Shown here: in pieces, positions 35,212 through 48,464 of the stretch
Numbering within the stretch: the first letter of the stretch is position 1
Layout: each line of letters starts with the position of its first letter
IMG/VR virus record: IMGVR_UViG_3300023179_005186
Location: 1 to 64,000 of that record
Reading direction: 5' to 3' (one strand)
Length of the DNA stretch: 64,000 nucleotides
Translations under genes and position numbers: made by a program
Notes under the pieces: generated by a model
What the model saw: only the letters and a program-made list of their open reading frames with translations
Told to the model about the DNA's origin: nothing
Database searches by the model: none

Positions 35212-36129
35212 ATGAATCAGAATATTAGTAAAAAAATCCTCTATCTTAAGACGGGTTATGTTATACCTATTAAAACTTTAACTGAAGTATTATCAAATGT
35301 ACTTACAGAAACAACATGGGTATTTACAGCACCTGATCCTAAAGATCCAGAAAAATTTGCAGGTTTAGAAATAGCAACCGCTGATACATCAAGAACAATT
35401 TTTATTAAAGTAAGATTAGATGCTAAAGAATTTGAACCTTATCATTGTAAATATGATAGATTAGAATTAGGAGTTAGTTTAATAAATCTATATAAACTTT
35501 TAAAATCGGTTGATAAAGATGATACAATGTCATTATATGTTGAAGAAAATGATAGACAAAATTTAATTATTGAAATAGAAAATCAAGAAAAAAAATCTAA
35601 AACATTTTACAAATTAAAGTTAATGGATTTAGATCAACCTCAAAAAAAAACAGCTAAAATTGATTTTGATATTAAAATTACAATGCCTAGTAATGAATTT
35701 CATAAACTTTGTAGAGAAATGAATAATATAGCTGAATATGTTGATATTAAATGTACTAGTAAAAATATTATTTTTACTTGTAAAGGTGATTGTGCTGAAA
35801 GAAGTACTATATTTAAATCAGAAGAAGGTGGATTAAATATTTCTAATGAAAATAAAAAAAATCACAATATTGTACAAGGAATTTATGAATTAAAAAATAT
35901 TGTATTATTTACAAAATGTGCAAATCTATGTAATGATATTGAAATTTATATGAAAAATGATTTTGCTTTAACTATAATTTATACAATAGCTACATTAGGT
36001 ACAATTATTATTGCATTGTCACCTGTTAAAGAAGAAAATATTAAAAATATTTCTTATTCCTATTCTGATGATGAAGAAGATTTAGATATTATCGGTGGAG
36101 GTGCAAATATACTTAAAGAAGATGCTTAA
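35212..36129 (+). CDS. PCNA: proliferating cell nuclear antigen (sliding clamp)
   Basis: F..Y.C....LGVSL..LYKLLKS, KLKLMDLD, MPSNEF.KLCREM, CKGD, EIYM.ND.AL.I.Y.IA.LG....LSP. Confidence 0.95.
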   Translation: MNQNISKKILYLKTGYVIPIKTLTEVLSNVLTETTWVFTAPDPKDPEKFAGLEIATADTSRTIFIKVRLDAKEFEPYHCKYDRLELGVSLINLYKLLKSVDKDDTMSLYVEENDRQNLIIEIENQEKKSKTFYKLKLMDLDQPQKKTAKIDFDIKITMPSNEFHKLCREMNNIAEYVDIKCTSKNIIFTCKGDCAERSTIFKSEEGGLNISNENKKNHNIVQGIYELKNIVLFTKCANLCNDIEIYMKNDFALTIIYTIATLGTIIIALSPVKEENIKNISYSYSDDEEDLDIIGGGANILKEDA

Positions 36130-36149
36130 AATTTTTTTATAAAAAATCA

Positions 36150-36668
36150 CTAATCTTTCGTTCCACCATCATATCTTTTAGCTAATCCTTTTTCAATCAT
36201 TAAATTATTTATATTTTCATTATTATAATAGATTGTACATAATGGTCTACCATATTTATCATTTGTACTAAATTCAACTTTTACTACTTTATTTTCTATT
36301 AAATTTAATAAAAAATTTTTTGCTTTAACTGCTTTGTTAATATGTTCTTCTCTATTTGGTATATTTTTTAAAGGTTTTAATTCTGGTGTATCAATCCCCA
36401 TTAATCTAGTTCTAATTTCAAATAAATTTATAGCAGAATCTGGATTTGAACTAGAATTATTATCTATTTTATCTTTTGAAATAAAAGAATAAACTGACAT
36501 TCTTATTGGAACTAATAAAACAATTGTATCACCATCATAAACAGATTTTACATAAAAATTACCTTTAATTTTTGAAAGATTAAATTTTAATGTTTCATTA
36601 TTTGTTATATCTAAAATCATTGGATTTTCATTTAAATCTAAATTAGTTTTTGTATTTATGCATCCCAT
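36150..36668 (-). CDS. thermonuclease (staphylococcal nuclease family)
   Basis: VYDGDT, RLMGIDTPE, DKYGRPL, NINNLMIEKGLA..YDGG. Confidence 0.95.
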   Translation of the reverse strand: MGCINTKTNLDLNENPMILDITNNETLKFNLSKIKGNFYVKSVYDGDTIVLLVPIRMSVYSFISKDKIDNNSSSNPDSAINLFEIRTRLMGIDTPELKPLKNIPNREEHINKAVKAKNFLLNLIENKVVKVEFSTNDKYGRPLCTIYYNNENINNLMIEKGLAKRYDGGTKD

Positions 36669-36699
36669 TATATTTATAATCTAATATTTATTATTTTAA

Positions 36700-36707
36700 T
36701 CAATTTT
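36700..36707 (-). promoter_or_regulatory. early promoter AAAATTGA (thermonuclease)
   Basis: exact octamer about 32 nt upstream of the start. Confidence 0.8.
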
Positions 36708-36734
36708 TATTGATTAAAATATTTATATAAAAAT

Positions 36735-37583
36735 TTAATATTCAGGTTTAATAGCCTTAAATTTAATTGATAATTTAGAAATTAATTTATACATATCATC
36801 ACTTAATATTTTATCTATTGTACCATAATGAATAATATTTATTTTAAACCATATTTTAATAATTACACATGCAGAATTAATACTTATATGATCTAACTTT
36901 CTTGGACTAAAAGATAATCCATTGACTACATTCCAAGTATTCTGAGAAAATTTTAATAAAGTATTATTTACCATTTGATAACAAAATGATTTTAATATAT
37001 TATATGCTTCTTCTAATGAATCAATTTTAATTTGACATAAAGAACCATTTCTATTATCAATATCTTCCCATAAAGGACTAATATCTCTTTTCATAATAAA
37101 AATATCAAAATCAGAATATGAACTTTCTCCAGAAGCTATATTTAATGTATTAAAAAATTTTGGTACATCACCCCATTTATTTAAAGTTGTAATATTATGA
37201 TAACTTAAAAAATCCCAATTTTTATCATCATTATGATGAGCTAATACTCTAAAATAATTAGTCATTTTATTTTCAAAAAAATTTTCTTCAAATTGTTTAT
37301 ATTCACATTCAATAACTGGTTTCTTCTTATTATTTGAAACAATAAGAAATTCTTCATCATTATTTAAATTTTGATTTATATTCTTATTATATTTATTTTT
37401 TGAATCTTTTTTAACAGTAAAATATTTAAAAACTTCTTCTTCTAATTTATCTAAAACAGGAGAACCTATTGTTTTATTATTGGTATTAATTATCGTTTTT
37501 GTCTCTTCGTCATCACTTTCTTCATTTAATAATGAAAAACGATTACTACCTGCTTTATTTTCTAATAACTGTTTTTCAGACAT
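36735..37583 (-). CDS. eIF4E: cap-binding translation initiation factor eIF4E
   Basis: NWDFLSY..I.TL, FIMKRDISPLWEDIDNRNGS, VNGLSFSP, IKIW. Confidence 0.9.
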   Translation of the reverse strand: MSEKQLLENKAGSNRFSLLNEESDDEETKTIINTNNKTIGSPVLDKLEEEVFKYFTVKKDSKNKYNKNINQNLNNDEEFLIVSNNKKKPVIECEYKQFEENFFENKMTNYFRVLAHHNDDKNWDFLSYHNITTLNKWGDVPKFFNTLNIASGESSYSDFDIFIMKRDISPLWEDIDNRNGSLCQIKIDSLEEAYNILKSFCYQMVNNTLLKFSQNTWNVVNGLSFSPRKLDHISINSACVIIKIWFKINIIHYGTIDKILSDDMYKLISKLSIKFKAIKPEY

Positions 37584-37621
37584 TTTAACTATATATTAAA
37601 TAATAATTAATTAATTTTTAA

Positions 37622-37629
37622 TCAATTTT
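37622..37629 (-). promoter_or_regulatory. early promoter AAAATTGA (eIF4E)
   Basis: exact octamer about 39 nt upstream of the start. Confidence 0.8.
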
Positions 37630-37662
37630 TTTTATTATATAAAATTATTATTTTTTTTTGTA

Positions 37663-38739
37663 TTACTTTTCTAAATAAAAAATTGATAAGAATGATATTA
37701 ATTGAATATTATCATTATTACAATATGTTAAATTTTCATTTATTAAACATAAATTTTTAATTATACTAACTACTTTTTCCATTTTATACTTGATTATTTC
37801 TTTATTATTATTTATAATAAAGTCTATAAAATAATCATAAACATAATTTATTAATTCAGCAAGAGATATACCATTTTCTATAGTTAAATTATTTACATAA
37901 TTATATGATTTATTAAAATCATTTTTTTGAATAAAACTAAGTATTTGAACTATATGTTTATGTGTAGGACATGATAATATTTTTGATATACTTGTTTCAT
38001 TTATAATTATTTGATTTGAATTAATTTTATCAGAATTAGATATTATTTCTGATTTTTTACAAATAATATTATCCAAATACATATTAACTGATTGTAAAAT
38101 ATTTAATAATTTTCTCATATCACCAGATGATCTTTTAATTATTAATTTTATTGCATTTGAAGTAATTTGTAAGTTTTCTTTTTTACAAATAGATATTACA
38201 AAACTATAAAGATAATCAAATGGTATTGGATTAAATCTAAAAATTACACATCTTGATTGTATTGCTGGATTAATTTTTTTAAGATAATTACAAATAAAAC
38301 AAAATCTAACATTTGATACATATTTTTCAATTACTTTTCGCAATATAGCTTGTGCATCTTCAGTCATTGCATCTATTTCGTCTAAAATTATTAATTTAAA
38401 AGTTGGTGTATTTGGATTTTCAGAAATACCTTTTGTTATTACAAATTGTTTTATTCTATTTCTAACTGTTTCTATACCACGTTCTTCTGAAGCATTTAAT
38501 ACTAATATCATATTGTCATAATCTTCACCATAATAATGTTTGGCCACTGCTATTATTAATGAAGTTTTACCTGTTCCAGGTGGACCATAAAATAATAAAT
38601 GTGGTAACTTTTTATGATCCATATAATTTACTATTGCTTTAGTTATTTTTTCATGATATATAATATTATTTATTGCAGATGGTCTGTATTTTTCTGACCA
38701 TGGTAAATTATTATATTTTTTTAAACTAGATAATGACAT
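37663..38739 (-). CDS. RFC: replication factor C small subunit
   Basis: PWSEKYRP, GPPGTGKTS, LNASEERGI, ILDEIDAMT, AIQSRC. Confidence 0.97.
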   Translation of the reverse strand: MSLSSLKKYNNLPWSEKYRPSAINNIIYHEKITKAIVNYMDHKKLPHLLFYGPPGTGKTSLIIAVAKHYYGEDYDNMILVLNASEERGIETVRNRIKQFVITKGISENPNTPTFKLIILDEIDAMTEDAQAILRKVIEKYVSNVRFCFICNYLKKINPAIQSRCVIFRFNPIPFDYLYSFVISICKKENLQITSNAIKLIIKRSSGDMRKLLNILQSVNMYLDNIICKKSEIISNSDKINSNQIIINETSISKILSCPTHKHIVQILSFIQKNDFNKSYNYVNNLTIENGISLAELINYVYDYFIDFIINNNKEIIKYKMEKVVSIIKNLCLINENLTYCNNDNIQLISFLSIFYLEK

Positions 38740-38867
38740 TATTTAACTATTATCTATATATATTAATTAATATTTAATAGGATTTACAAATTTTTTAATT
38801 TTATATATTTTAAATAAATTTATAAAAATTATTATATAAATTAATTTTTATACAAATTTTTTATATA

Positions 38868-38875
38868 AAAATTGA
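38868..38875 (+). promoter_or_regulatory. early promoter AAAATTGA (RPB1)
   Basis: exact octamer about 46 nt upstream of ATG 38921. Confidence 0.85.
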
Positions 38876-38920
38876 TTTTATTTATAAATAATATAAAGTA
38901 ATAGAATATATATATATATC

Positions 38921-39955
38921 ATGAATGTTCATAGGTATAATGAGAAGACATCCTCAATTGAAAGGATTGATTTTACAATCCTTGGTAATAAGGAAATCAA
39001 AAATATGTCTGTGTTAAATGATAAATCTGGTCCTGGTCCAGGATTAGTTGTACCTGATTTATATGATAATACTGAACCCAAAAAAGGTGGTCTTATTGAT
39101 CAACGAATGGGTGTTACTTCAAATGAACTAGAATGCACAACATGTGGTTTAAGTACAAACTATTGTGTTGGTCATTTTGGTCATATGGAATTAGCAGAAC
39201 CAGTATTTCACATGGGATTTTATGATTATGTCATCTCAATTTTAAGATGTGTATGTATTAAATGTTCTAAAATATTAGTTTATAAAAATGAAAAAGAAAT
39301 TATGGATATTTTAAAAAATAAAACAGGTAAAGGTAGACTTAATGAAATTAAAAATTTAGTTAAAAATGTTACTTATTGTCAAAAAGCTTTTTATGGATGT
39401 GGTGCACCAGTACCTAAAATAAAATCTGATAAAAAAAAAACAAGTGAAGTATATATTGTTGCTGAATATTTATTATCTTCTTCTACTGAAGAAGATCTAG
39501 AAAAAAAACCGATTAAAGAAACATTAACACCAAATTTAGTTTATAATATATTAAAAAATATTTCTGATACAGATTGTATGATAATTGGATTTGATCCAAA
39601 AAAAAATAGACCTGAAGATTTAATTCACACTATTTTTCCGGTACCTCCTGTACAAGTTAGACCTTCTGTTAGAGGTGATTTTGGTTCTTCTACTACACGT
39701 GAAGATCATTTAACTGTGATACTTTCAAATATATTAAAAGCTAACATTAGAATGAATAAAAATAAAGAAAATGTTACAGAAAATTCATTAAAATATATAC
39801 CTGATCATACTACTTTACTTCAATATCATGTAGCTGTTTATTATGATAGTGATTCTCTTAAAATTCCTGAAACTCAAAGAAAGAATATCACTACTAAATC
39901 ATTAAGTACACGTTTAAAAGGTAAAGAAGGACGTATTCGAAATAATCTGATGGGT
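38921..39955 (+). CDS. RPB1: RNA polymerase largest subunit, exon 1 (345 codons)
   Basis: Zn sites CTTC..CVGHFGH and CVC.KC; PPVQVRPS; ends RLKGKEGRIRNNLMG at U39955. Confidence 0.95.
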
Positions 39956-41321
39956 AATCTGTTTCTCTAGGAAAGAAACAATAGCTTGCTCACAATAGGC
40001 GACTGCTTATTTGGTTGTTGTATCACCAAATAAGGAAAACAGTATAAATACAATCTAGTAATAGTATATAATCGTCTAGTGGATAAATTAAATTATTTAT
40101 CTGCAACACTTCCAAATTGCGGGAACATCTAATTTTGCATTTGCAAATAACTATTTTATACTTCCAGAATATTGAAAAATATTTTGTAATCAACGGAGAA
40201 ATTCGTTAAAAAATAATATGCTTAAAAATTAAAATATATAAAAAGATATATGAAAAATGAATATTGGTGAAATTTATAAAATTACTAATTTAATAAATAA
40301 TAAAATATATATTGGTAAAACTAAAAAATATTATAAAAATATTGAATTTGGTTATTTAAAACGTTTTATTAATCACAAAGTATCAGCAAATTCAGAATCT
40401 AAAAAAAATGATTGTCCTAGACTATATAATGCTATAAGAAAATATGGTAATAAAAATTTTAAAGTCGAAATGATTCATGAATGTGAATTAAAAATCATTG
40501 ATGAAAAAGAAATTGAATTTATAAAAAAGTACAATTCAACTGACAGAAATATAGGTTATAATATCGCCCTTGGTGGTGGTGGTCGTAGTGTTGTTAATAT
40601 ATCTGAAGAAATTCGTTATAAAATTTCAAAGAAACAAAATACTGAACATCCAATGAATATTAAACCTTATTTAAAAAACAATGTACTTGTTGGTTATACA
40701 GTTCAACGAAGAGAAAATGGTATGGTTTTTAGAAAATATTTTACAAATTCTAAAAATATTCCAGAAATTAATCTTGAACTTGCAAAAAACTGGTTAAATG
40801 ATATAATAGATAACAAAATCGATAATACAAATATTAACAAATATAATAGAGATAGTAATTTACCAAAAAATATATATCAAATTATTGAAAATGATAAATT
40901 AGTTGGTTATAAAGTAAATATAATGATTGATGGAAAAAAATATACAAAATCATTTCAATCAAATACTACACTAATTGAAGAGCTTTTGCAAAAAGCTATT
41001 AAATATAAAGAAAGCATATTAAACAGTTATAATTAAAATAGTGAACTGGGAAACCAGTATTAGACAATCCGCAGCCAAGTTCCTAAGTATATTTTTAATA
41101 TATATGGAAAAGGTTCAGAGACTAGATGGTAGTGGGTACTTGAATTTTTAATTCTTGTGCTTAAGGTATAGTCCGTGTCTTGGTGACAAGACTTCCAACT
41201 TTTAAGGAGTTGGGGTTTAAATGATTTAAAATAGTTATTTAAGCTAGTAGATATCAACCTAGACCTAAAGGTTAAATTAATTTAAAAACTAATTTAGCCC
41301 ATGGTTGAAGATATCGATTCG
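39956..41321 (+). mobile_element. group I intron 1 of RPB1 (1366 nt)
   Basis: 5' exon ends in U, intron ends in G. Core P AAATTGCGGGAA 40114-40125, Q AATCCGCAGC 41066-41075, R GTTCAGAGACTAGA 41113-41126, S AAGGTATAGTCC 41163-41174. Splicing restores LMG|KRTDFSGR. Confidence 0.93.
40257..41036 (+). CDS. intron-encoded GIY-YIG homing endonuclease
   Basis: GEIYKITNLINNKIYIGKT, KRFINH, LYNAIRKYG, E.EFIKKYNS..GYN; AP2-like C-terminal DNA-binding units. Confidence 0.9.
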   Translation: MNIGEIYKITNLINNKIYIGKTKKYYKNIEFGYLKRFINHKVSANSESKKNDCPRLYNAIRKYGNKNFKVEMIHECELKIIDEKEIEFIKKYNSTDRNIGYNIALGGGGRSVVNISEEIRYKISKKQNTEHPMNIKPYLKNNVLVGYTVQRRENGMVFRKYFTNSKNIPEINLELAKNWLNDIIDNKIDNTNINKYNRDSNLPKNIYQIIENDKLVGYKVNIMIDGKKYTKSFQSNTTLIEELLQKAIKYKESILNSYN

Positions 41322-41747
41322 AAGAGAACAGATTTTTCGGGGCGTACAGTAATTACGCCTGATCCAAACTTATCTATTAATGAACTTGGAATGCCAATAA
41401 CAATTGCTATGAATATAACATTTCCAGAAATAGTAACTCCTCATAATAAGGATTATTTGGAAAAATTAGTTAGAAATGGTCGTGAAGTTTATCCAGGAGC
41501 TAATTTTATTATTCCTGCAACTTTAAGTGATTCGGATTCCAAGTCAATTATTGATTTAAGATTTAGAAAAAATAAAATTGAATTAAGATATGGTGACATT
41601 GTAGAAAGACATACAAAAAATAATGATATTGTTTTACTCAATCGTCAACCAACTTTACATAAACAAAGTATGATGGGACATAGAGTTAAGGTTATTAATA
41701 ATCCTAACTATTGTACGTTTAGAATTAATCCTAACGTAACAACTCCT
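41322..41747 (+). CDS. RPB1: RPB1 exon 2 (142 codons)
   Basis: [15 protein letters not shown] ... [14 protein letters not shown] ... [10 protein letters not shown]. Confidence 0.95.
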
Positions 41748-43072
41748 TAATGTCAGGGAGTAAAAGCATGAGAAAAACCTTATGCTAGTTTGCTAACAAT
41801 TTATATTAATTGTTATACAAGCGAAATAGTGATATGCGGGAAAGTCCTAAAGTTTTAGATACTAAGTTGAATAAAGAAATTTGTTTGATGGCTTTGGTGA
41901 AAAATCAAGGGTATAGTAAAAATTCTAAAAATAATTAAAGTATTTTAAAAATTATTTAATATAGATATAATAGCTATGGATGAAAGTCAAGATACTGGAG
42001 TTATATATTGTATTGAAAATATAATCACACATAAAAAATATATTGGTCAAGCAAAATCTTATATATTAAAAAAAGGTAAAATTGTTAAACACGGTTTATC
42101 AGGTAGGTTTAAAACACATTTAAAAAGTGCTTTTTCTGGTAAAAATAGTTGTCCTAAATTATACAATTCAATTGTAAAGTATGGATATAAAAGTTTTTCC
42201 ATATCTTTATTAGAAATTTGTTATTTAGAATTTTTAAATGAAAAAGAAACTTTTTACATAAAAAAATTTAATACTGTAGAAGATGGTTATAATATATTAT
42301 ATAGTAATTCAACAATTCATAAAAACTTTGATAGTAGAAAAAATGTTATTGAAAAAATATCAAATACTATGAAAGATAAATGGTCTAATGATGAACAATA
42401 TATAAATAAAACTACTAAAAATAATCTTAAAGCAGTTATTGAAAGAACCAAAAGAGGAACTAGAATTATAAACAAAGAATTACCAAATAATATATATAAA
42501 ACAAAAAATGGTTTTGATATAAGAATAATGAGAAATGGTGTATATAAAATTACATCAGTTGAAAGTAAAATTTTAACTCATGAAGAACTTATTTTAAAAG
42601 CAATTGAGAAAAGAGACAAAATATTTGAACAAATTAAAAATAATGATGTGATTAATTTTCAAAAAAAATATGACCACAATGGTAATGATTTACCAATTGG
42701 TATTCATCTTAAAAAAGCAAGAAATCAAGATGCATATGGAGTAAAAATTATTATTGATGGTAAAATTTATGAAAAATGTGTATCTGATAAAAAACTTTCA
42801 ATGGATGAAAAATTAATAAAAGCTAAAATATTATTAAATGAATTAAAAATACTTTATAAAATGGAAAATCCGCAGGTTCAAGTCTAAATTCGTTATGATA
42901 GAATATGACAAGGACCTCAGAGACTACGTTGCTATTGGTCAATAATGATAGTTTAATCAACTGGAATTGGCTTAAGGTATAGTCCACTCCCACAGGAAAC
43001 TGTGTATACAAGTAGAATTGTATAAGATTGTGATAACAAGAGGAAATGCTTGTTTGAATCTGGTATTTAAGG
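41748..43072 (+). mobile_element. group I intron 2 of RPB1 (1325 nt)
   Basis: P1: exon ACUCCU pairs with GGGAGU (41756-41761) with a U-G wobble at the splice site. P TGCGGGAA 41835, Q AATCCGCAGG 42867, R CTCAGAGACTAC 42916, S AAGGTATAGTCC 42974; terminal G43072. Confidence 0.93.
41976..42887 (+). CDS. intron-encoded GIY-YIG homing endonuclease
   Basis: GVIYCIENIITHKKYIGQA, GRFKTH, LYNSIVKYG, E.FYIKKFNT..GYN; repeated LP.NIY/LPIGIH AP2-like units. Confidence 0.9.
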   Translation: MDESQDTGVIYCIENIITHKKYIGQAKSYILKKGKIVKHGLSGRFKTHLKSAFSGKNSCPKLYNSIVKYGYKSFSISLLEICYLEFLNEKETFYIKKFNTVEDGYNILYSNSTIHKNFDSRKNVIEKISNTMKDKWSNDEQYINKTTKNNLKAVIERTKRGTRIINKELPNNIYKTKNGFDIRIMRNGVYKITSVESKILTHEELILKAIEKRDKIFEQIKNNDVINFQKKYDHNGNDLPIGIHLKKARNQDAYGVKIIIDGKIYEKCVSDKKLSMDEKLIKAKILLNELKILYKMENPQVQV

Positions 43073-43096
43073 TACAACGCAGATTTTGACGGTGAT
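43073..43096 (+). CDS. RPB1: RPB1 exon 3: 24-nt micro-exon encoding YNADFDGD (catalytic Mg2+-binding motif)
   Basis: TAC AAC GCA GAT TTT GAC GGT GAT between omega-G43072 and intron 3; joins TTP|YNADFDGD|EMN in frame. Confidence 0.95.
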
Positions 43097-43598
43097 AGAT
43101 CATTTTGTCACCAACAGCAAGCTGCCAATTAAGTTACTATTCATACTTAATTGGGTAAACAGTGTAAGAATAGTCTAGATATAACTTGCTAGTCTTGTTT
43201 TAAATAAGGCAAGATTACCAATTTGTTCGGGAACCCCTTAAAGCACTACATACTAAACATAATTTGAAAAAATTATGTGGTTTTGCGCAATGGCAAAAAT
43301 TTTTCATAGCAGAATATAATAAACTTTTAAATATACTTAAAAAAAGCTATGAAATAAGTAAAAATTGTAGTGATATTCCTAAAGGATAATAGGAAACCCG
43401 CAGCCGGTCATCTAAGTTCGTTTGATAGAATATGATGATGGTTCAGAGACTTGATGGTAGTCGGTCGGTAATGAAGGTCTAATCAACCTGAACTGGCTTA
43501 AGATAAAGTCCAATTGTCTTCCGAAAGGAAGAATGAAAGATATTTTAAAAATATAAACCTAAGTCAATAAAATGATATGGTTTATGGATATCTTCATG
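43097..43598 (+). mobile_element. group I intron 3 of RPB1 (502 nt, no ORF)
   Basis: P1: exon GGUGAU pairs with GUCACC (43107-43112) with a U-G wobble. P10: UCAUUUU (43100-43106) pairs with exon 4 GAAAUGA. P 43226, Q AACCCGCAGC 43395, R GTTCAGAGACTTGA 43441, S AAGATAAAGTCC 43500; terminal G43598. Confidence 0.93.
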
Positions 43599-46500
43599 GA
43601 AATGAACATTTTTGCACCTCAGAGTATTGAAACCCAATATGAATTAGAGGAAATTGCAGATTTAAAATTACAAATAATTACACCTCAATCTTCTTCACCA
43701 ATTATAGCGATGAAGCAAGATCAATTATTAGGTGCATATAATTTAACTTCTGAATATTATAAATTAGATTGGAGAACTACTATGAATTTATTAGCGTCCA
43801 CTCAAATGGAATCACTTGATAATGTTCCTAAAAACAAAGATTATGCTGGAAAAGAAATTTTCTCTTATTTAATTCCTAAAAAAATTAATCTTATGAAGGG
43901 TGATCCTACTAAACCAACTATTTTAGTTAAAAATGGTATTATGGAATCAGGTATTTTAGGGGATGATTCGCTAGGTGTAAAAAAATCACCTAGTTTAGTA
44001 CAATTAGTCTGGGATGAATATGGTGTTGAGAAAACAAAAACTTTTTTGGATAATACTACCAAATTAGCAAATAACTTTAATTTATTTCACGGTATGACTG
44101 TTGGTATTAAAGATCTTTATATCAGTAATGAACTTGATAATAAAATGCAACAGACTTTTGATACTAAAAAATTAGAAATTCAACATGAAATTACTGAAAT
44201 TGAAAATAATCCAGATATGATGGATGGTGATCTTTTTGAAATGTCCGTTAATCAAAAATTATCAGTTATTCGTGATGATGTATCCAAAGTTATTATGGCT
44301 AGTATGACTAAAGAAAATAATTTTAGGATTATGATTGAATCTGGATCAAAAGGTAAACCAATTAATATCACTCAAATGGCTGGATTAGTTGGTCAACAAG
44401 ATTATCATGGTGGACGCATATTGAAAAACTTTAATAATAGATCTTTACCTTATTTTTTTCAAAATGATGATCGTGCCGAATCAAGAGGTTTTATTGAAAG
44501 ACCTTTTATGCATGGATTAAATATCTCAGAATTTATTTTTCATCATCTATCTTCTAGAGAAGGTCTAATTGATCAAACTGTGCGATCTGTTACTCCTGAT
44601 ACTAGAATTACTATTATTGAAAATTCGATTCCCAAAACTGTTGAAATAGGTCCTTGGATTGATTCGATAATTAAAATAAAATCTGATCAAGTCGAACACG
44701 ATGTTAACGAATTTGAATTAGTTAATGTAACTGGTATTACAATCCCAACTGTTGACTCTGTTGGAAAAGTTACTTGGGCTAATGTAACTGCAGTTACTAG
44801 ACATGCTAAAGGAAATCAATTGTTTGAAATCGTAACTAGAGGTGGTAGAAAAGTTAAAGTTCCTGAATCTAAATCACTTTTGATCTGGAATAATGAGACT
44901 AAACAATTTGAAGATAAACTTACTCCAGATGTTAAAGTCGGAGATTTCGTTCCTGTTACAATGAATTTACCTCAACCTCCTATTATAAATAATCATATTG
45001 ATATGACAGAATTTAAAATACAGGAAGAGAAAGATTCGTTATTACCAGATAAATTTATATTAAATAAATTAAATGGTCAATTCATTGGATTATTCTTAGC
45101 TGATGGTAATGTTAATTATGAAAATGGCTATATACATTTAAATAATTGTAATGAAAATGTGTTAAACTTTATTAAAAAGTACTTTGACGGTCTAGATATT
45201 AGTTATAATGAGAATAAAAAAATATTAGAAATAGAAACTATTACTGATATTAGTGGTTATTCTAGAATTTTATGCAAGTTCCTATATGCTACTTGTGGTA
45301 ATGATGCTTATGAAAAACATGTTCCTGATTTTGCATTCAATGCTCCTGAAGAGTTTGTTATTGGACTAATTGATGGATATATATCTAGAAATGCTTGTGT
45401 AACCGAATCCTCTATTACTACCTTATCTTGTTCATTAAAGTTAATTGATGGAATTAATATGTTATTAAATAGAATTGGTGTATTTTCTAAAATTAGTACT
45501 CATAAATATGATAACAAAAACAATGATATTAAAGCCAATTATAATATTATTGAAATTGGTATTAGAGCACAATGGGTGCGCAAATTTAAATCTAAAATGA
45601 TATCTCTAATTAACTTTAATAAAAATGATAAATTTTATAAAATAGAAAGTTCAACAATTACTCATACAAATTACATAGAACAAGAAGATGTTGTACTTGA
45701 TCAAATTGTTGAAATTAATCAACTTAATCCTGAAAATTATCCTAAACTATATGATTTAACTGTTCCTGGAACTTTTAACTTTATAATAAGTAATGGAATG
45801 GGTTGTCGAGATACTGCAGATAGTGGTTATATTCAAAGAAAGCTAATCAAATCAACTGAAGATTTCATGGTAAATTATGATGGTACAGTTAGAAATGCTG
45901 TAGGTAGAATTCAACAATTCGTGTATGGTGAATCAGGTGCAGACACAGTTAAACAATATGAATATAAATTTCAAATAATGGAACTTTCAAATTCAGAAAT
46001 TGCTAACAAATTTAAATTTACTAAAGAAGAACTTACTAAAGTCAAAAATTTTACTGAATCTGATAATAATAAATTTTATCAAAATATATTAAAATGTCGT
46101 GATCATTTAAGGTTTACTCAAATGAAATCAACTGTTGAATATAAAATTCTTAATATAAAATACATGTTACCAGTTAATATATATCGTATTATAAATAATA
46201 TTAGAAATGATCCTGATAAAAAAGGTAATGTAAATTATGATTGTGAATATATTCTAAACTTAATTGATAGAATTTTAGAAAGTAAAAATACCAAGTTATA
46301 TTGCATGACTGAAGAAGAAATGAAAGATGAATCTTCTATTAAATATAAAGATGATCAAATGGCAAAGACAGCCTTAAAATATGCTTTATTAGAATCACTT
46401 GCTCCAAAAAAATGTATTTATACTTATAAATTTACAAAGGAACAGTTAGAAGATGTAGCTACTGATATTATTTCAAGTTTTAACTCAAGTATTGTTGAAC

Positions 46501-48464
46501 CAGGCGAAATGGTTGGAATTATTGCTGCACAAAGTTTAGGTGAACCAGTTACACAGCTTATGTTAAATAGCCTTGACTGGACTGAAGAAATACTTATTCA
46601 TGATTCAAAATCAAATCAGGATACAGTTTTACCTATTGGTCAATTTATTGACAACTTAATTGATAATAATAAAGGTCAGGTAACTAATCCTATTGATAAC
46701 TTGGAAGCTGAAATGAAAAATATTTATTATCTAGATACAAATGATTGTAATTATCAAATCAAGTCAGTTGATGAAAATGGTAAAGTATCATGGAAAAAAA
46801 TAGAAGCAGTTACAAAACATTTACCTATTAATAAAGATGGTACTAATACTTTAATTAGGGTAACAACTAGAACTGGTAAATCTGTTATTGCTACTAAAGG
46901 AAAATCATTCTTAACACAAAAAAATAATAAGATTGTTCCTATTAGGGGTGATGAATTAGAAATTAAAACTTGTTTACCTATAATGAATAAATGTTTAAAT
47001 TTAGATGGTATTACCTATGAATATTATAAACATAATATTCATAATATACAAGAATTTGGTGATGTGTTTATGGATGAAATTATATCAATTGAAGATATTC
47101 AACCAACAAACACTTATGTTTATGATTTTACTGTTCAAGATACTAAAACATTTATTATTTCAAATGGTTTATGTTGTATGGATAGCTTTCACTCGTCAGG
47201 AGTAGGTGGTAAAGGTAGTAAAAGTATTGGTGTTGATCGAATCAAAGAAGTTTTTAGTTTATCAAAAAATCCAAAAGAACCAATAATGATGATTTATTTG
47301 AATAAAGAACATAGAGAAAAGAAAGATTTTGCGAATAAAATAGCTTCTCACATTAAATTTACCACCATTAAAGACTTGAGGACTAAAATTGAAATATATT
47401 ATGATCCTAAACCTTATAGTAAAAATGGATTTATGGAAAAAGATAACATTAATACTATATTCTATACTTATCAACAATCTAAACAATGTTGTGCTAATAC
47501 TATTGATGGATTACCTTGGTTAATGAGAATTGAATTTGATAGAGAAAAATTACTTTCTAAAGAAGTTTCTCTTTTAGATATTAAATCTCAATTCTGTTTT
47601 AGTTGGGAAAAACGTTATCAAGATATTAAAAGTGTTAAACGAGAAAAACGTGTTATTTTAGAAAAAATTTCACAATTAGCTGTATTATCTAACACTGATA
47701 ATGATGATATACCAACAGTGCATTTAAGATTCGATATGACTAACTTTAATTCATCTACATTAATTGACTTTATGGATATGTTTGTTGATGACTTTAAACT
47801 TAAAGGTATGTCGAATATTGATGATATTAGAGGTGGTGGTAAAGCAATTGAAGAACGTTATATTAGTTTTGATAATCCTGAAAATTCTTTTGAAAAGAAA
47901 AATGAATATGTCGTTTATACTAATGGAATTAACATGTATGATATTCGAAATATTATAGGTATTGATTTAACTAGAACTTATTGTAATGATATTATTACCA
48001 CTTATGAAATATTTGGTATTGAAGCTGCACGTAATCTTATTATACGTGAAATTATTAATGTATTATCTTCCAATGGTTCTGGTACTAACTATCAACACAT
48101 TGGTATGTTTGGTGATTTAATGACTAATCAGGGAACTTTAACATCAATAGATAGACATGGTTTAAATAAATTAGATACTGATCCATTCTCTAGAGCATCA
48201 TTTGAAAAAACTGTTGATCAATTAATTACTGCTGCAGTATTTAATGAAGTTGATCATATGAAATCAGTTTCTTCTAGAATTATGGCTGGTCTTTGTATTA
48301 AAGGTGGTACTGGTTTATGTGATCTAATTTTAGATAAAGATTTGTTAGAAAATTCAGAATACACTATAGATATTGGACAATTATACAATAAAACTTATCA
48401 AGATATTACTGTTCAACAAAAACAACAAGAAATAGATATTGAAGTATTTATTCCTGATTTATAA
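43599..48464 (+). CDS. RPB1: RPB1 exon 4, containing two inteins
   Basis: EMNIFAPQ, SGSKG, REGLID, GYIQRK, GIIAAQSLGEP, FGIEAAR, ASFE. Removing all introns and inteins gives about 1502 aa. Confidence 0.96.
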   Translation, partial: EMNIFAPQSIETQYELEEIADLKLQIITPQSSSPIIAMKQDQLLGAYNLTSEYYKLDWRTTMNLLASTQMESLDNVPKNKDYAGKEIFSYLIPKKINLMKGDPTKPTILVKNGIMESGILGDDSLGVKKSPSLVQLVWDEYGVEKTKTFLDNTTKLANNFNLFHGMTVGIKDLYISNELDNKMQQTFDTKKLEIQHEITEIENNPDMMDGDLFEMSVNQKLSVIRDDVSKVIMASMTKENNFRIMIESGSKGKPINITQMAGLVGQQDYHGGRILKNFNNRSLPYFFQNDDRAESRGFIERPFMHGLNISEFIFHHLSSREGLIDQTVRSVTPDTRITIIENSIPKTVEIGPWIDSIIKIKSDQVEHDVNEFELVNVTGITIPTVDSVGKVTWANVTAVTRHAKGNQLFEIVTRGGRKVKVPESKSLLIWNNETKQFEDKLTPDVKVGDFVPVTMNLPQPPIINNHIDMTEFKIQEEKDSLLPDKFILNKLNGQFIGLFLADGNVNYENGYIHLNNCNENVLNFIKKYFDGLDISYNENKKILEIETITDISGYSRILCKFLYATCGNDAYEKHVPDFAFNAPEEFVIGLIDGYISRNACVTESSITTLSCSLKLIDGINMLLNRIGVFSKISTHKYDNKNNDIKANYNIIEIGIRAQWVRKFKSKMISLINFNKNDKFYKIESSTITHTNYIEQEDVVLDQIVEINQLNPENYPKLYDLTVPGTFNFIISNGMGCRDTADSGYIQRKLIKSTEDFMVNYDGTVRNAVGRIQQFVYGESGADTVKQYEYKFQIMELSNSEIANKFKFTKEELTKVKNFTESDNNKFYQNILKCRDHLRFTQMKSTVEYKILNIKYMLPVNIYRIINNIRNDPDKKGNVNYDCEYILNLIDRILESKNTKLYCMTEEEMKDESSIKYKDDQMAKTALKYALLESLAPKKCIYTYKFTKEQLEDVATDIISSFNSSIVEPGEMVGIIAAQSLGEPVTQLMLNSLDWTEEILIHDSKSNQDTVLPIGQFIDNLIDNNKGQVTNPIDNLEAEMKNIYYLDTNDCNYQIKSVDENGKVSWKKIEAVTKHLPINKDGTNTLIRVTTRTGKSVIATKGKSFLTQKNNKIVPIRGDELEIKTCLPIMNKCLNLDGITYEYYKHNIHNIQEFGDVFMDEIISIEDIQPTNTYVYDFTVQDTKTFIISNGLCCMDSFHSSGVGGKGSKSIGVDRIKEVFSLSKNPKEPIMMIYLNKEHREKKDFANKIASHIKFTTIKDLRTKIEIYYDPKPYSKNGFMEKDNINTIFYTYQQSKQCCANTIDGLPWLMRIEFDREKLLSKEVSLLDIKSQFCFSWEKRYQDIKSVKREKRVILEKISQLAVLSNTDNDDIPTVHLRFDMTNFNSSTLIDFMDMFVDDFKLKGMSNIDDIRGGGKAIEERYISFDNPENSFEKKNEYVVYTNGINMYDIRNIIGIDLTRTYCNDIITTYEIFGIEAARNLIIREIINVLSSNGSGTNYQHIGMFGDLMTNQGTLTSIDRHGLNKLDTDPFSRASFEKTVDQLITAAVFNEVDHMKSVSSRIMAGLCIKGGTGLCDLILDKDLLENSEYTIDIGQLYNKTYQDITVQQKQQEIDIEVFIPDL
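44586..45812 (+). mobile_element. RPB1 intein A (409 aa; Ser1...Asp C-terminus, +1 Thr) with LAGLIDADG-type domain
   Basis: LIDQTVR|SVTPDT ... FIGLFLADG ... IGLIDGY ... YDLTVPGTFNFIISNGMGCRD|TADSGY; removal restores the bridge-helix sequence. Confidence 0.9.
46569..47183 (+). mobile_element. RPB1 intein B (205-aa mini-intein; Ser1...Asp C-terminus, +1 Ser)
   Basis: GEPVTQLMLN|SLDWTE ... YVYDFTVQDTKTFIISNGLCCMD|SFHSSG; removal restores the trigger-loop sequence. Confidence 0.9.

What the first reader, a model, noticed from the sequence alone, without database searches (positions are those of the whole stretch)
43073..43096. The RNA polymerase catalytic motif YNADFDGD is a 24-nt micro-exon between two self-splicing introns
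Seen: exactly eight codons, holding all three Mg2+-binding Asp, flanked by omega-G of intron 2 and a perfect P1 (GGUGAU/GUCACC with U-G wobble) of intron 3. No ORF caller recovers it, so annotation would report a broken or catalytically dead RPB1. The micro-exon must serve as 3' exon for intron 2 and as P1 substrate for intron 3, which may impose splicing order. Skipping it would be in frame and give a full-size inactive subunit. Inference: a possible splicing-dependent switch on the viral polymerase. The intron-split target may also be immune to rival homing endonucleases.
Basis: partly seen in the sequence, partly recalled or inferred. Interest (0 to 1): 0.85.

Follow-up and report, generated by a model that had tools for sequence, protein, structure and literature searches.

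The report
Catalytic micro-exon between two self-splicing introns
In this giant virus, the eight codons for the RNA polymerase metal-binding site form a 24-base exon between two mobile group I introns; dozens of related viruses show similar layouts, so it looks like a by-product of selfish introns and not a regulatory switch.

Summary
Window 43073-43096 encodes YNADFDGD. These are exactly the eight residues missing between exon 2 (ends ...NPNVTTP at 41747) and exon 4 (starts EMNIF at 43599) of an RPB1 gene from a freshwater giant-virus contig.

Both flanks are group I introns. Each has U•G at the 5' splice site, a terminal G and matching guide sequences. An 82%-identical relative has the same region uninterrupted, with exactly the predicted junctions.

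The arrangement is not unique:
- At least 55 distinct IMG/VR loci have the motif on a micro-exon, usually 33 nt (TKPYNADFDGD).
- Close relatives of this virus have 21 nt, a single intron, or none.
- Four insertion sites lie within 11 codons.
- The guide sequences covary with the exon codons across about 60 loci.
- In 32 of 39 complete pairs, exactly one of the two flanking introns carries a homing endonuclease.

Best reading: two selfish introns sit in adjacent homing sites and splice independently. Nothing forces a splicing order, and nothing supports a skipping "switch".

RNA evidence is missing. The one metatranscriptome that holds the locus shows only unspliced contigs at DNA-like depth.

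It is a new member of a known kind and matters mainly for annotation.

The parts
38921..39955 (+). RPB1 exon 1 (345 aa, ends ...RIRNNLMG)
   Evidence: ORF list. Colinear with the uninterrupted L002 sequence ...RNNLMG|KRTDFS. The last base is U.
39956..41321 (+). Group I intron 1, carrying a GIY-YIG-type endonuclease ORF at 40257-41036. Guide GCUCA at 39988-39992 pairs with exon UGGGU. The terminal G is 41321.
   Evidence: The 3' half scores 58.2 bits on RF00028, above the gathering score of 50. A contig of a ~90% relative in run X26 joins 39955 to 41322. P1 scan. Pfam SegE_GIY-YIG 22.3 bits, below cut-off.
41322..41747 (+). RPB1 exon 2 (142 aa, KRTDFS...NPNVTTP)
   Evidence: Aligns to solved RPB1 up to the residue just before YNADFDGD. 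82% identical to the L002 homolog.
41748..43072 (+). Group I intron 2. Guide GGGAGU at 41756-41761 pairs with exon ACUCCU (U•G at the splice site). GIY-YIG-type ORF at 41976-42887 whose end overlaps the ribozyme core. Terminal G is 43072.
   Evidence: The 3' half scores 41 bits, E 1.8e-9, on RF00028, below gathering. GGGAGU is the only full 6-bp P1 match in the intron. P3 (AAUAGUG/UGCUAUU) pairs across the ORF, read. An ORF-less homolog sits at the same site in L271 and L273. P1 shows compensatory changes against L109.
43073..43096 (+). 24-nt micro-exon TACAACGCAGATTTTGACGGTGAT = YNADFDGD (metal A Asp triad)
   Evidence: Compared with intron-free L002 it has 4 synonymous and 0 non-synonymous differences.
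43097..43598 (+). Group I intron 3, with no endonuclease ORF. P10 guide UCAUUUU at 43100-43106, P1 guide GUCACC at 43107-43112, terminal G at 43598.
   Evidence: RF00028 at 44.2 bits, E 4.5e-10, full model length, below gathering 50. 75% identical to the L004 intron at the same site. Family alignment of 16 introns: 56 of 78 pairs show compensatory changes. P1 and P10 covary with the exon in about 60 loci. The P1 hairpin folds at -17.3 kcal/mol, z = -4.3.
43599..48464 (+). RPB1 exon 4 (starts EMNIFAPQS). Bases 43599-43605 (GAAAUGA) are the P10 target of intron 3. Contains two inteins, at 44586-45812 and 46569-47183.
   Evidence: Aligns to solved RPB1 from the residue right after the motif. Pfam Intein_splicing and LAGLIDADG_3. 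Intein coordinates.

Best explanation
The window holds a giant-virus RPB1 gene cut by three mobile group I introns of one family. Introns 2 and 3 sit in two homing sites only 24 nt apart, in the most conserved stretch of the gene. The catalytic motif YNADFDGD is therefore left as a free-standing micro-exon.

Inferred mechanism:
- Each intron folds into its own ribozyme.
- Intron 2 holds exon 2 through P1 (ACUCCU/GGGAGU) and ligates it to the micro-exon after its terminal G (43072).
- Intron 3 holds the last six bases of the micro-exon through P1 (GGUGAU/GUCACC), holds exon 4 through a 7-bp P10 (GAAAUGA/UCAUUUU), and ligates after G 43598.
- The guide elements do not overlap, so the two reactions can occur in either order.
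- The product reads ...NPNVTTP-YNADFDGD-EMNIF..., as in intron-free relatives. Two inteins are then removed from the protein.

The micro-exon is a by-product of selfish-element colonisation and not a regulatory device. The GIY-YIG endonuclease in intron 2 probably cuts intron-free alleles in co-infecting relatives. Because intron 3 lies only 24 nt away, repair would copy both introns together (inferred).

Shown: the sequence anatomy, homology, covariation, and presence/absence among relatives. Inferred: actual splicing, endonuclease activity and co-conversion.
For: 1. Exactly 8 residues are missing between exons 2 and 4 relative to solved RPB1s, and the micro-exon supplies them.

2. L002 (82% aa identity) has ...NPNVTTPYNADFDGDEMNIF... 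and ...NNLMGKRTDFS... uninterrupted, matching all three predicted junctions. Twenty-two further intron-free relatives were found in metagenomes.

3. Group I signatures: RF00028 hits for intron 1 (58.2 bits), intron 3 (44.2) and the 3' half of intron 2 (41). U precedes each 5' splice site and pairs with G, and each intron ends in G.

4. In 61 distinct loci with an intron after ...FDGD, the free third base of the Gly codon pairs with the free base of the guide in 58 cases by Watson-Crick (all four pair types) and 2 by wobble. P10 covaries in 44 of 46.

5. RNAalifold on 16 ORF-less family members gives 56 of 78 pairs with compensatory changes.

6. The P|Y-site intron shows compensatory P1 changes between the window (ACUCCU/GGGAGU) and L109 (ACCCU/GGGGU).

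7. The micro-exon differs from L002 only by 4 synonymous changes.

8. The arrangement recurs: 55 distinct IMG/VR loci have introns on both sides of the motif. The 94% relative L271 and the 85% relative L273 have a 21-nt micro-exon with a different downstream intron. L272 has one intron only.

9. Of 39 complete intron pairs, 32 have exactly one endonuclease ORF.

10. An independent DNA sample reproduces the arrangement.
Against: There is no RNA evidence of splicing. The only metatranscriptome holding the locus (X4) gives unspliced contigs at flat, DNA-like depth. No spliced or intron-free contig above 82% identity exists in the metagenome collection.

Introns 2 and 3 fall below Rfam's gathering score, and the 5' part of intron 2 alone gives no Rfam hit.

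P10 of intron 2 is weak: at most 3 bp, and out of register.

The endonuclease ORFs match Pfam GIY-YIG only below cut-off.

Co-conversion of the two introns is an inference.
Confidence: 0.85

Rival explanations
1. Splicing-dependent switch. The micro-exon is sometimes skipped, joining 41747 to 43599. This would give a full-length but catalytically dead RPB1 that tunes or times viral transcription.
For: Skipping would be in frame (24 nt). The micro-exon holds all three metal-binding Asp residues. Nothing measured here excludes rare skipping.
Against: Being in frame follows from the U-at-minus-1 rule at third codon positions, and all four insertion sites seen are phase 0.

I find no pairing between intron 2's guide region (UAAUGUCA GGGAGU) and exon 4 that would support ligating exon 2 to exon 4.

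Close relatives have 24-nt, 21-nt, single-intron and intron-free versions. No conserved regulatory unit exists, and the polymerase evidently works without the introns.

Endonuclease ORFs mark the introns as selfish elements.
Confidence: 0.04
2. The locus is a dead or decaying RPB1. The 24 nt are a relic, and the active polymerase is encoded elsewhere or is not needed.
For: No transcript evidence. The gene is broken into four pieces plus two inteins.
Against: All exons are open and colinear with relatives. The micro-exon carries only synonymous differences from L002. The ribozyme cores, guides and terminal G residues are intact. Only one RPB1 exon-2 homolog was found on the 315-kb source contig, and only one NADFDGD in the window. 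The same layout persists in many lineages.
Confidence: 0.03
3. Metagenome assembly chimera: the introns or the micro-exon were joined from different organisms.
For: The window comes from a metagenome contig.
Against: Several independent DNA runs from other samples and years hold 0.77-0.89 of the sampled words. A 1215-nt contig from run X2 covers 42276-43490 with no mismatch. Relatives L271 and L273 from other assemblies show the same upstream intron plus micro-exon.
Confidence: 0.01

Closest known systems
Group I introns with homing endonucleases in the RNA polymerase genes of Bodo saltans virus and klosneuviruses (PMC5871332)
   Same: A giant-virus RPB1 (polr2a) is invaded by several related group I introns. 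Some carry GIY-YIG or HNH endonucleases, and others are ORF-less 'offspring' in the same gene. Inteins sit in the same gene. Splicing in BsV was confirmed by RT-PCR. The authors proposed a role in competition between viruses.
   Different: The text of that paper does not mention a micro-exon or an active-site location. This window has endonuclease ORFs in introns 1 and 2, whereas BsV has one 'parental' intron. I could not fetch the BsV locus to compare insertion sites.
Mini-exons between self-splicing introns in mitochondrial genes such as cox1 (PMC10352661, PMC12308204)
   Same: Very short exons are flanked on both sides by autocatalytic introns. They encode highly conserved residues, gene callers miss them, and they have to be found from the gap in a protein alignment.
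   Different: Those are organellar genes, with exons as short as 1-3 nt. This case is in a virus with a large DNA genome, the exon is 24 nt (21-33 nt in relatives), and it coincides with the polymerase metal-binding motif.
Jumbo phage PhiPA3 intron with endonuclease gp210 in an RNA polymerase beta subunit gene (PMC11620839)
   Same: A group I intron with a homing endonuclease is inserted immediately after conserved Asp residues of a viral multisubunit RNA polymerase gene. The endonuclease cuts the intron-free allele of a co-infecting relative.
   Different: That is a phage, the enzyme is an HNH nickase, there is a single intron in the beta-like subunit, and there is no micro-exon. Its function was shown experimentally, whereas here it is only inferred.
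Phage T4 td intron with I-TevI (my own knowledge, not tested here)
   Same: A GIY-YIG endonuclease is encoded in a loop of a group I intron inside a conserved enzyme gene. Homing proceeds with co-conversion of flanking sequence.
   Different: Different host and gene, and a single intron. The cleavage offset and the target of the window's enzymes are unknown.

Membership tests
Group I intron (Rfam RF00028) | The 5' splice site follows a U that pairs with G of an internal guide sequence (P1) | tested here: met
   Intron 1 UGGGU/GCUCA, intron 2 ACUCCU/GGGAGU, intron 3 GGUGAU/GUCACC. P1 covaries with the exon in 58 of 61 loci.
Group I intron (Rfam RF00028) | The intron ends in G (omega-G) immediately before the 3' exon | tested here: met
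   G at 41321, 43072 and 43598. The 13 micro-exon loci found by the scan, whose pattern did not fix this base, are all preceded by G. The loci found by the pattern had the G imposed.
Group I intron (Rfam RF00028) | Conserved catalytic core (P3-P9) detectable by covariance model and by covariation | tested here: met
   Intron 1 3' half 58.2 bits (above gathering 50). Intron 3 44.2 bits and intron 2 3' half 41 bits (both below gathering, E about 1e-9 in small searches). Family alignment: 56 of 78 pairs with compensatory changes. The whole-window scan at gathering finds nothing.
Group I intron (Rfam RF00028) | P10 pairing of the guide with the 3' exon | tested here: inconclusive
   Intron 3 has 7 bp (GAAAUGA/UCAUUUU), and this pairing covaries in 44 of 46 loci. 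Intron 2 has at most 3 bp, out of register. The L109 homolog of intron 2 has 7 bp.
Group I intron (Rfam RF00028) | Self-splicing with guanosine and Mg2+ | not testable with these tools
   No spliced RNA was seen. X4 contigs are unspliced, and no spliced contig was found.
GIY-YIG homing endonuclease | N-terminal GIY-YIG catalytic domain | tested here: inconclusive
   Pfam SegE_GIY-YIG scores 22.3 and 16.6 bits against a cut-off of 25. IY...YIG motifs are visible. About 40% identity to ORFs of more than 25 introns at the FDGD site.
GIY-YIG homing endonuclease | Cuts the intron-free allele near the insertion site | not testable with these tools
   Needs an enzyme assay on an L002-like target.
RPB1 (largest subunit of a multisubunit RNA polymerase) | NADFDGD metal A motif in register between the flanking conserved segments | tested here: met
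   Met only after joining 41747/43073 and 43096/43599. Colinear with L002.
Mini-exon between self-splicing introns (organellar type) | An exon of a few codons with an autocatalytic intron on each side, needed to complete a conserved protein segment | tested here: met
Twintron (intron inside an intron) - considered | The two introns are nested or directly abutting, with no coding sequence between them | tested here: not met
   The 24 nt between them are required coding sequence.
Regulated cassette exon - considered | Both inclusion and skipping isoforms exist | not testable with these tools
   No transcript data. Comparative data argue against a conserved unit.

The most novel reading that the evidence does not exclude
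Tandem ribozymes 21-33 nt apart occasionally join exon 2 directly to exon 4. This would produce a full-length, metal-site-less RPB1 that acts as a dominant-negative subunit. It could time transcription, or it could poison the polymerase pool of a co-infecting relative. On this reading the recurrent micro-exon would be selected for and would not be a mere by-product.
Probability: 0.03. Interest if true: 0.8.

Novelty: new member of a known kind. Interest (0 to 1): 0.4.

Why it matters
RPB1 is a core marker for giant-virus phylogeny and for estimating genome completeness. Here, and in at least 55 other environmental genomes, the catalytic motif sits on a 21-33-nt exon. ORF callers and default Rfam scans both miss it, so automatic annotation reports a fragmented or catalytically dead polymerase.

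The census shows that the 11 codons around the metal-binding site are a hot-spot with four intron insertion sites. Presence and absence vary among close relatives, and there is a roughly one-endonuclease-per-pair pattern. This is a natural system for studying intron homing, hitch-hiking of ORF-less introns, and competition between co-infecting giant viruses. It is also a natural case of two ribozymes that must fold side by side on a very short spacer.

Tried and rejected
1. RNA evidence. Both run searches and the single read-laying run were used. X4 gives unspliced, DNA-like coverage, and X25 and X26 give only fragments of relatives. No splice junction at the micro-exon could be seen or excluded.

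2. Search for a spliced or intron-free form of this virus in metagenome contigs. Only relatives at 82% nt identity or less were found.

3. Rfam on the whole gene region or the whole window finds no intron, because the endonuclease ORFs split the cores. Only short sub-windows give hits. The 5' part of intron 2 alone gives none.

4. The first two pattern scans failed on a syntax rule and were resent in corrected form.

5. Identifying Bodo saltans virus or other isolates among the protein hits, to compare insertion sites. The hits carry no organism names, so I do not know whether BsV has the same micro-exon.

6. Literature searches for NADFDGD plus intron, and for micro-exon plus group I intron in giant viruses, gave no description of this arrangement.

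7. I considered a formal pair count including the P7 and P10 pseudoknots. It would have needed a 675-character typed structure string, so I relied instead.

8. Twintron, pseudogene and assembly-chimera readings were considered and rejected (see rivals and the membership test).

Full report
**What is in the window**

The window is the first 64 kb of a 315-kb freshwater giant-virus contig. It is AT-rich, about 22% G+C.

Between 38921 and 48464 on the + strand lies an RPB1 gene in four coding pieces:
- Exon 1 ends ...RIRNNLMG at 39955.
- Exon 2 runs 41322-41747 (KRTDFS...NPNVTTP).
- Exon 4 starts at 43599 (EMNIFAPQS).

Against solved RPB1 structures, exon 2 ends at residue 491 of chain 7ega_o (477 in yeast 1i3q_A), and exon 4 begins at residue 500 (486 in yeast). 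Exactly eight residues are missing.

Window 43073-43096 translates to YNADFDGD. It is the only such motif in six frames of the window. The expected number of chance occurrences is about 8e-8. No ORF in the right frame covers it, even at a 20-aa cut-off.

**The flanks are group I introns**

- Intron 3 (43097-43598) matches Rfam RF00028 over the full model at 44.2 bits, E 4.5e-10 in a 516-nt search. That is below the gathering score of 50.
- The 3' half of intron 2 (41748-43072) scores 41 bits.
- The 3' half of intron 1 (39956-41321) scores 58.2 bits, above gathering.

A scan of the whole window at gathering threshold finds nothing, because endonuclease ORFs split introns 1 and 2.

Each 5' splice site follows a U that can pair with a G of a guide sequence. 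These guides lie where the family alignment places them:
- Intron 1: UGGGU/GCUCA (39988-39992).
- Intron 2: ACUCCU/GGGAGU (41756-41761). This is the only full 6-bp match in that intron.
- Intron 3: GGUGAU/GUCACC (43107-43112).

Each intron ends in G (41321, 43072, 43598).

Intron 3 also has a 7-bp P10. UCAUUUU (43100-43106), directly 5' of the P1 guide, pairs with GAAAUGA, the first bases of exon 4. The P1 hairpin folds at -17.3 kcal/mol, z = -4.3.

Intron 2 has only a weak P10. Its P3 helix (AAUAGUG/UGCUAUU) pairs across the inserted ORF (read).

**Relatives fix the junctions**

L002, 82% identical in exon 2, reads ...RNNLMGKRTDFS... and ...NPNVTTPYNADFDGDEMNIF... without interruption. All three predicted junctions are therefore exactly colinear with an intron-free gene. 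The micro-exon differs from L002 by four synonymous changes and no non-synonymous ones. Twenty-two more intron-free relatives with TTPYNADFDGDEMNIF exist in metagenome contigs. The closest is 82% identical in nucleotides.

L004 is a 55% relative from the same metagenome. It has only the intron after ...DFDGD. That intron is 75% identical to intron 3.

**Covariation**

It still gave 61 distinct RPB1 loci with an intron at this site.

- The third base of the Gly codon and the matching guide base were both left free in the pattern. They form a Watson-Crick pair in 58 loci (G-C 36, U-A 11, A-U 7, C-G 4), a wobble in 2, and a mismatch in 1.
- The P10 position, which was not part of the pattern at all, pairs in 44 of 46.
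- RNAalifold on 16 ORF-less members recovers P1, P2, P2.1, P3, P4, P5, P6, P8 and P9, with compensatory changes in 56 of 78 pairs.

The family is therefore a genuine, structurally constrained group I intron, and its splice sites are exactly at D|E.

**The micro-exon is recurrent**

In total, 152 distinct motif-bearing loci were fetched:

| Intron position relative to the motif | Loci |
|---|---|
| Both sides | 55 (after removing one misclassified locus) |
| Downstream only | 55 |
| Upstream only | 13 |
| Neither | 28 |

In 54 of the 55, the micro-exon is 33 nt (TKPYNADFDGD). The upstream intron sits at ...FRMNVAD|TKP, with P1 GCCGAU/GUCGGC and P10 ACAAA/UUUGU, and both pairings covary.

L109 (and L141, which is identical to it around the motif) has the same 24-nt micro-exon as the window. 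Its upstream intron has P1 ACCCU/GGGGU, with two compensatory changes relative to the window, and a 7-bp P10 onto the first seven bases of the micro-exon.

**Close relatives differ**

- L271 is a 94% aa relative. It has an ORF-less homolog of intron 2 at P|Y, then a 21-nt micro-exon (YNADFDG). Next comes a different 1079-nt intron carrying an HNH-like ORF at G|D, with P1 GAUGGU/GCCAUC.
- L273 (85%) has the same layout.
- L272 (85%) has only an ORF-less G|D intron, which scores 29 bits on RF00028.
- L002 has no introns here.

Four insertion sites (VAD|TKP, P|Y, G|D, D|E) thus lie within 11 codons, and occupancy varies among near relatives.

**The elements are selfish**

The ORFs in introns 1 and 2 carry IY...YIG motifs. 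They hit Pfam SegE_GIY-YIG below the cut-off and are 31% identical to each other. They are about 40% identical in the N-terminal domain to ORFs of more than 25 introns at the FDGD site.

Introns at the upstream and downstream sites of one locus can be 92% identical in the core. Introns from the different sites interleave in a tree of cores. This echoes the 'offspring' introns described in Bodo saltans virus (PMC5871332).

Among 39 complete pairs, 26 have an endonuclease ORF only downstream, 6 only upstream, 3 in both and 4 in neither. The window fits the 'exactly one' pattern. This is consistent with the ORF-less partner being copied along during repair. That is my inference and was not shown.

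- Splicing order. The guide elements of introns 2 and 3 touch non-overlapping parts of the micro-exon, so no splicing order is imposed.
- In-frame skipping. All four sites are phase 0 because the 5' splice site needs a U, and here that U is the third base of CCU, GAU or GGU codons. I found no pairing that would bring exon 4 to intron 2's guide.
- A conserved switch. With intron-free, one-intron, 21-nt, 24-nt and 33-nt versions among relatives, a conserved switch is unlikely.
- Protection against homing endonucleases. Protection of an occupied site, and harm to intron-free competitors, are plausible. The PhiPA3 intron in a phage RNA polymerase gene is an experimental precedent (PMC11620839). 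Neither effect was tested here.

**RNA evidence**

The only metatranscriptome that holds the locus (X4) yields contigs that run straight across exon-intron borders (40417-42643 and 43156-44124). Their depth is similar to that of the DNA run from the same study, so DNA carry-over is the likely source. One contig in RNA run X26, from a ~90% relative, joins 39955 to 41322. That agrees with the intron 1 boundaries, but it could come from an intron-free relative. An independent DNA contig (X2, 42276-43490, no mismatch) confirms the genomic arrangement.

**Comparison with what is known**

- Multiple group I introns with endonucleases in giant-virus RNA polymerase genes are described for BsV, with RT-PCR support (PMC5871332).
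- Mini-exons between self-splicing introns are routine in mitochondrial genes (PMC10352661, PMC12308204).
- I found no paper describing the catalytic motif as a micro-exon, and I could not inspect the BsV locus.

**Verdict**

The regulatory interpretation is not supported. The finding is a new member of a known kind. It has practical weight for annotation, and it identifies a useful comparative result: a four-site intron hot-spot at the polymerase active site.

Noticed in passing
window 44586-45812 and 46569-47183: There are two inteins in RPB1 exon 4: 409 aa with a LAGLIDADG domain, and a 205-aa mini-intein. Both start with Ser and end ...SNG(M/L)xC(R/M)D, that is with Asp and not the usual His-Asn. 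They are followed by Thr or Ser. After removal the extein junctions read GLIDQTVR|TADSGYIQ and PVTQLMLN|SFHSSGV, matching cellular RPB1.
   Followed up: partly
window 41297-41302: GCCCAU sits 20 nt before the 3' end of intron 1. It is a perfect complement, with a U•G wobble, to the last six bases of exon 1 (AUGGGU), and it pairs better than the 5-bp guide at the canonical position (39988-39992). From base composition I estimate about 0.05 chance occurrences of this 6-mer in the intron (hand estimate). Its meaning is unknown.
   Followed up: partly
L271 1607-1627 and 1628-2706; L273 about 3387: Relatives at 94% and 85% aa identity carry a 21-nt micro-exon (YNADFDG). Their downstream intron is a different one, with an HNH-like ORF, and sits one codon earlier (G|D). 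Their copy of intron 2 lacks the endonuclease ORF.
   Followed up: yes
window 41939-42825 compared with L271 about 1362: The GIY-YIG ORF of intron 2 is present in the window but absent from the otherwise 87%-identical intron in L271. The ORF therefore behaves as a separate insertion or deletion module within the intron.
   Followed up: partly
54 IMG/VR loci, e.g. L031 1279-1312, L061 2749-2782: A 33-nt micro-exon TKPYNADFDGD is flanked by two related group I introns. In L031 the two flanking introns are 92% identical in the core. ORFs in the upstream introns start with a CxxC...CxxC zinc-finger-like segment and are not GIY-YIG.
   Followed up: partly
window 38850-44750, run X4: A run labelled as a metatranscriptome covers introns and exons evenly and unspliced, at a depth similar to the DNA run of the same study. 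It probably contains DNA and cannot serve as expression evidence.
   Followed up: yes
window 39955/41322, run X26: A 198-nt contig in an RNA library, from a ~90% relative, joins exon 1 directly to exon 2. It is either a spliced transcript or an intron-free relative.
   Followed up: no
window 43250-43400: Intron 3 carries an AT-rich insert of about 100 nt in its P5 region that L004 lacks. The insert includes a 41-aa ORF (43264-43389) with no Pfam match. It may be the remnant of a lost endonuclease gene.
   Followed up: partly
window 35212-38739 compared with L272 1-3437: The gene order upstream of RPB1 is PCNA, a staphylococcal-nuclease-like gene, an eIF4E-like gene, then the replication factor C small subunit. 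This order is conserved in an 85% relative from an NCBI metagenome assembly.
   Followed up: no
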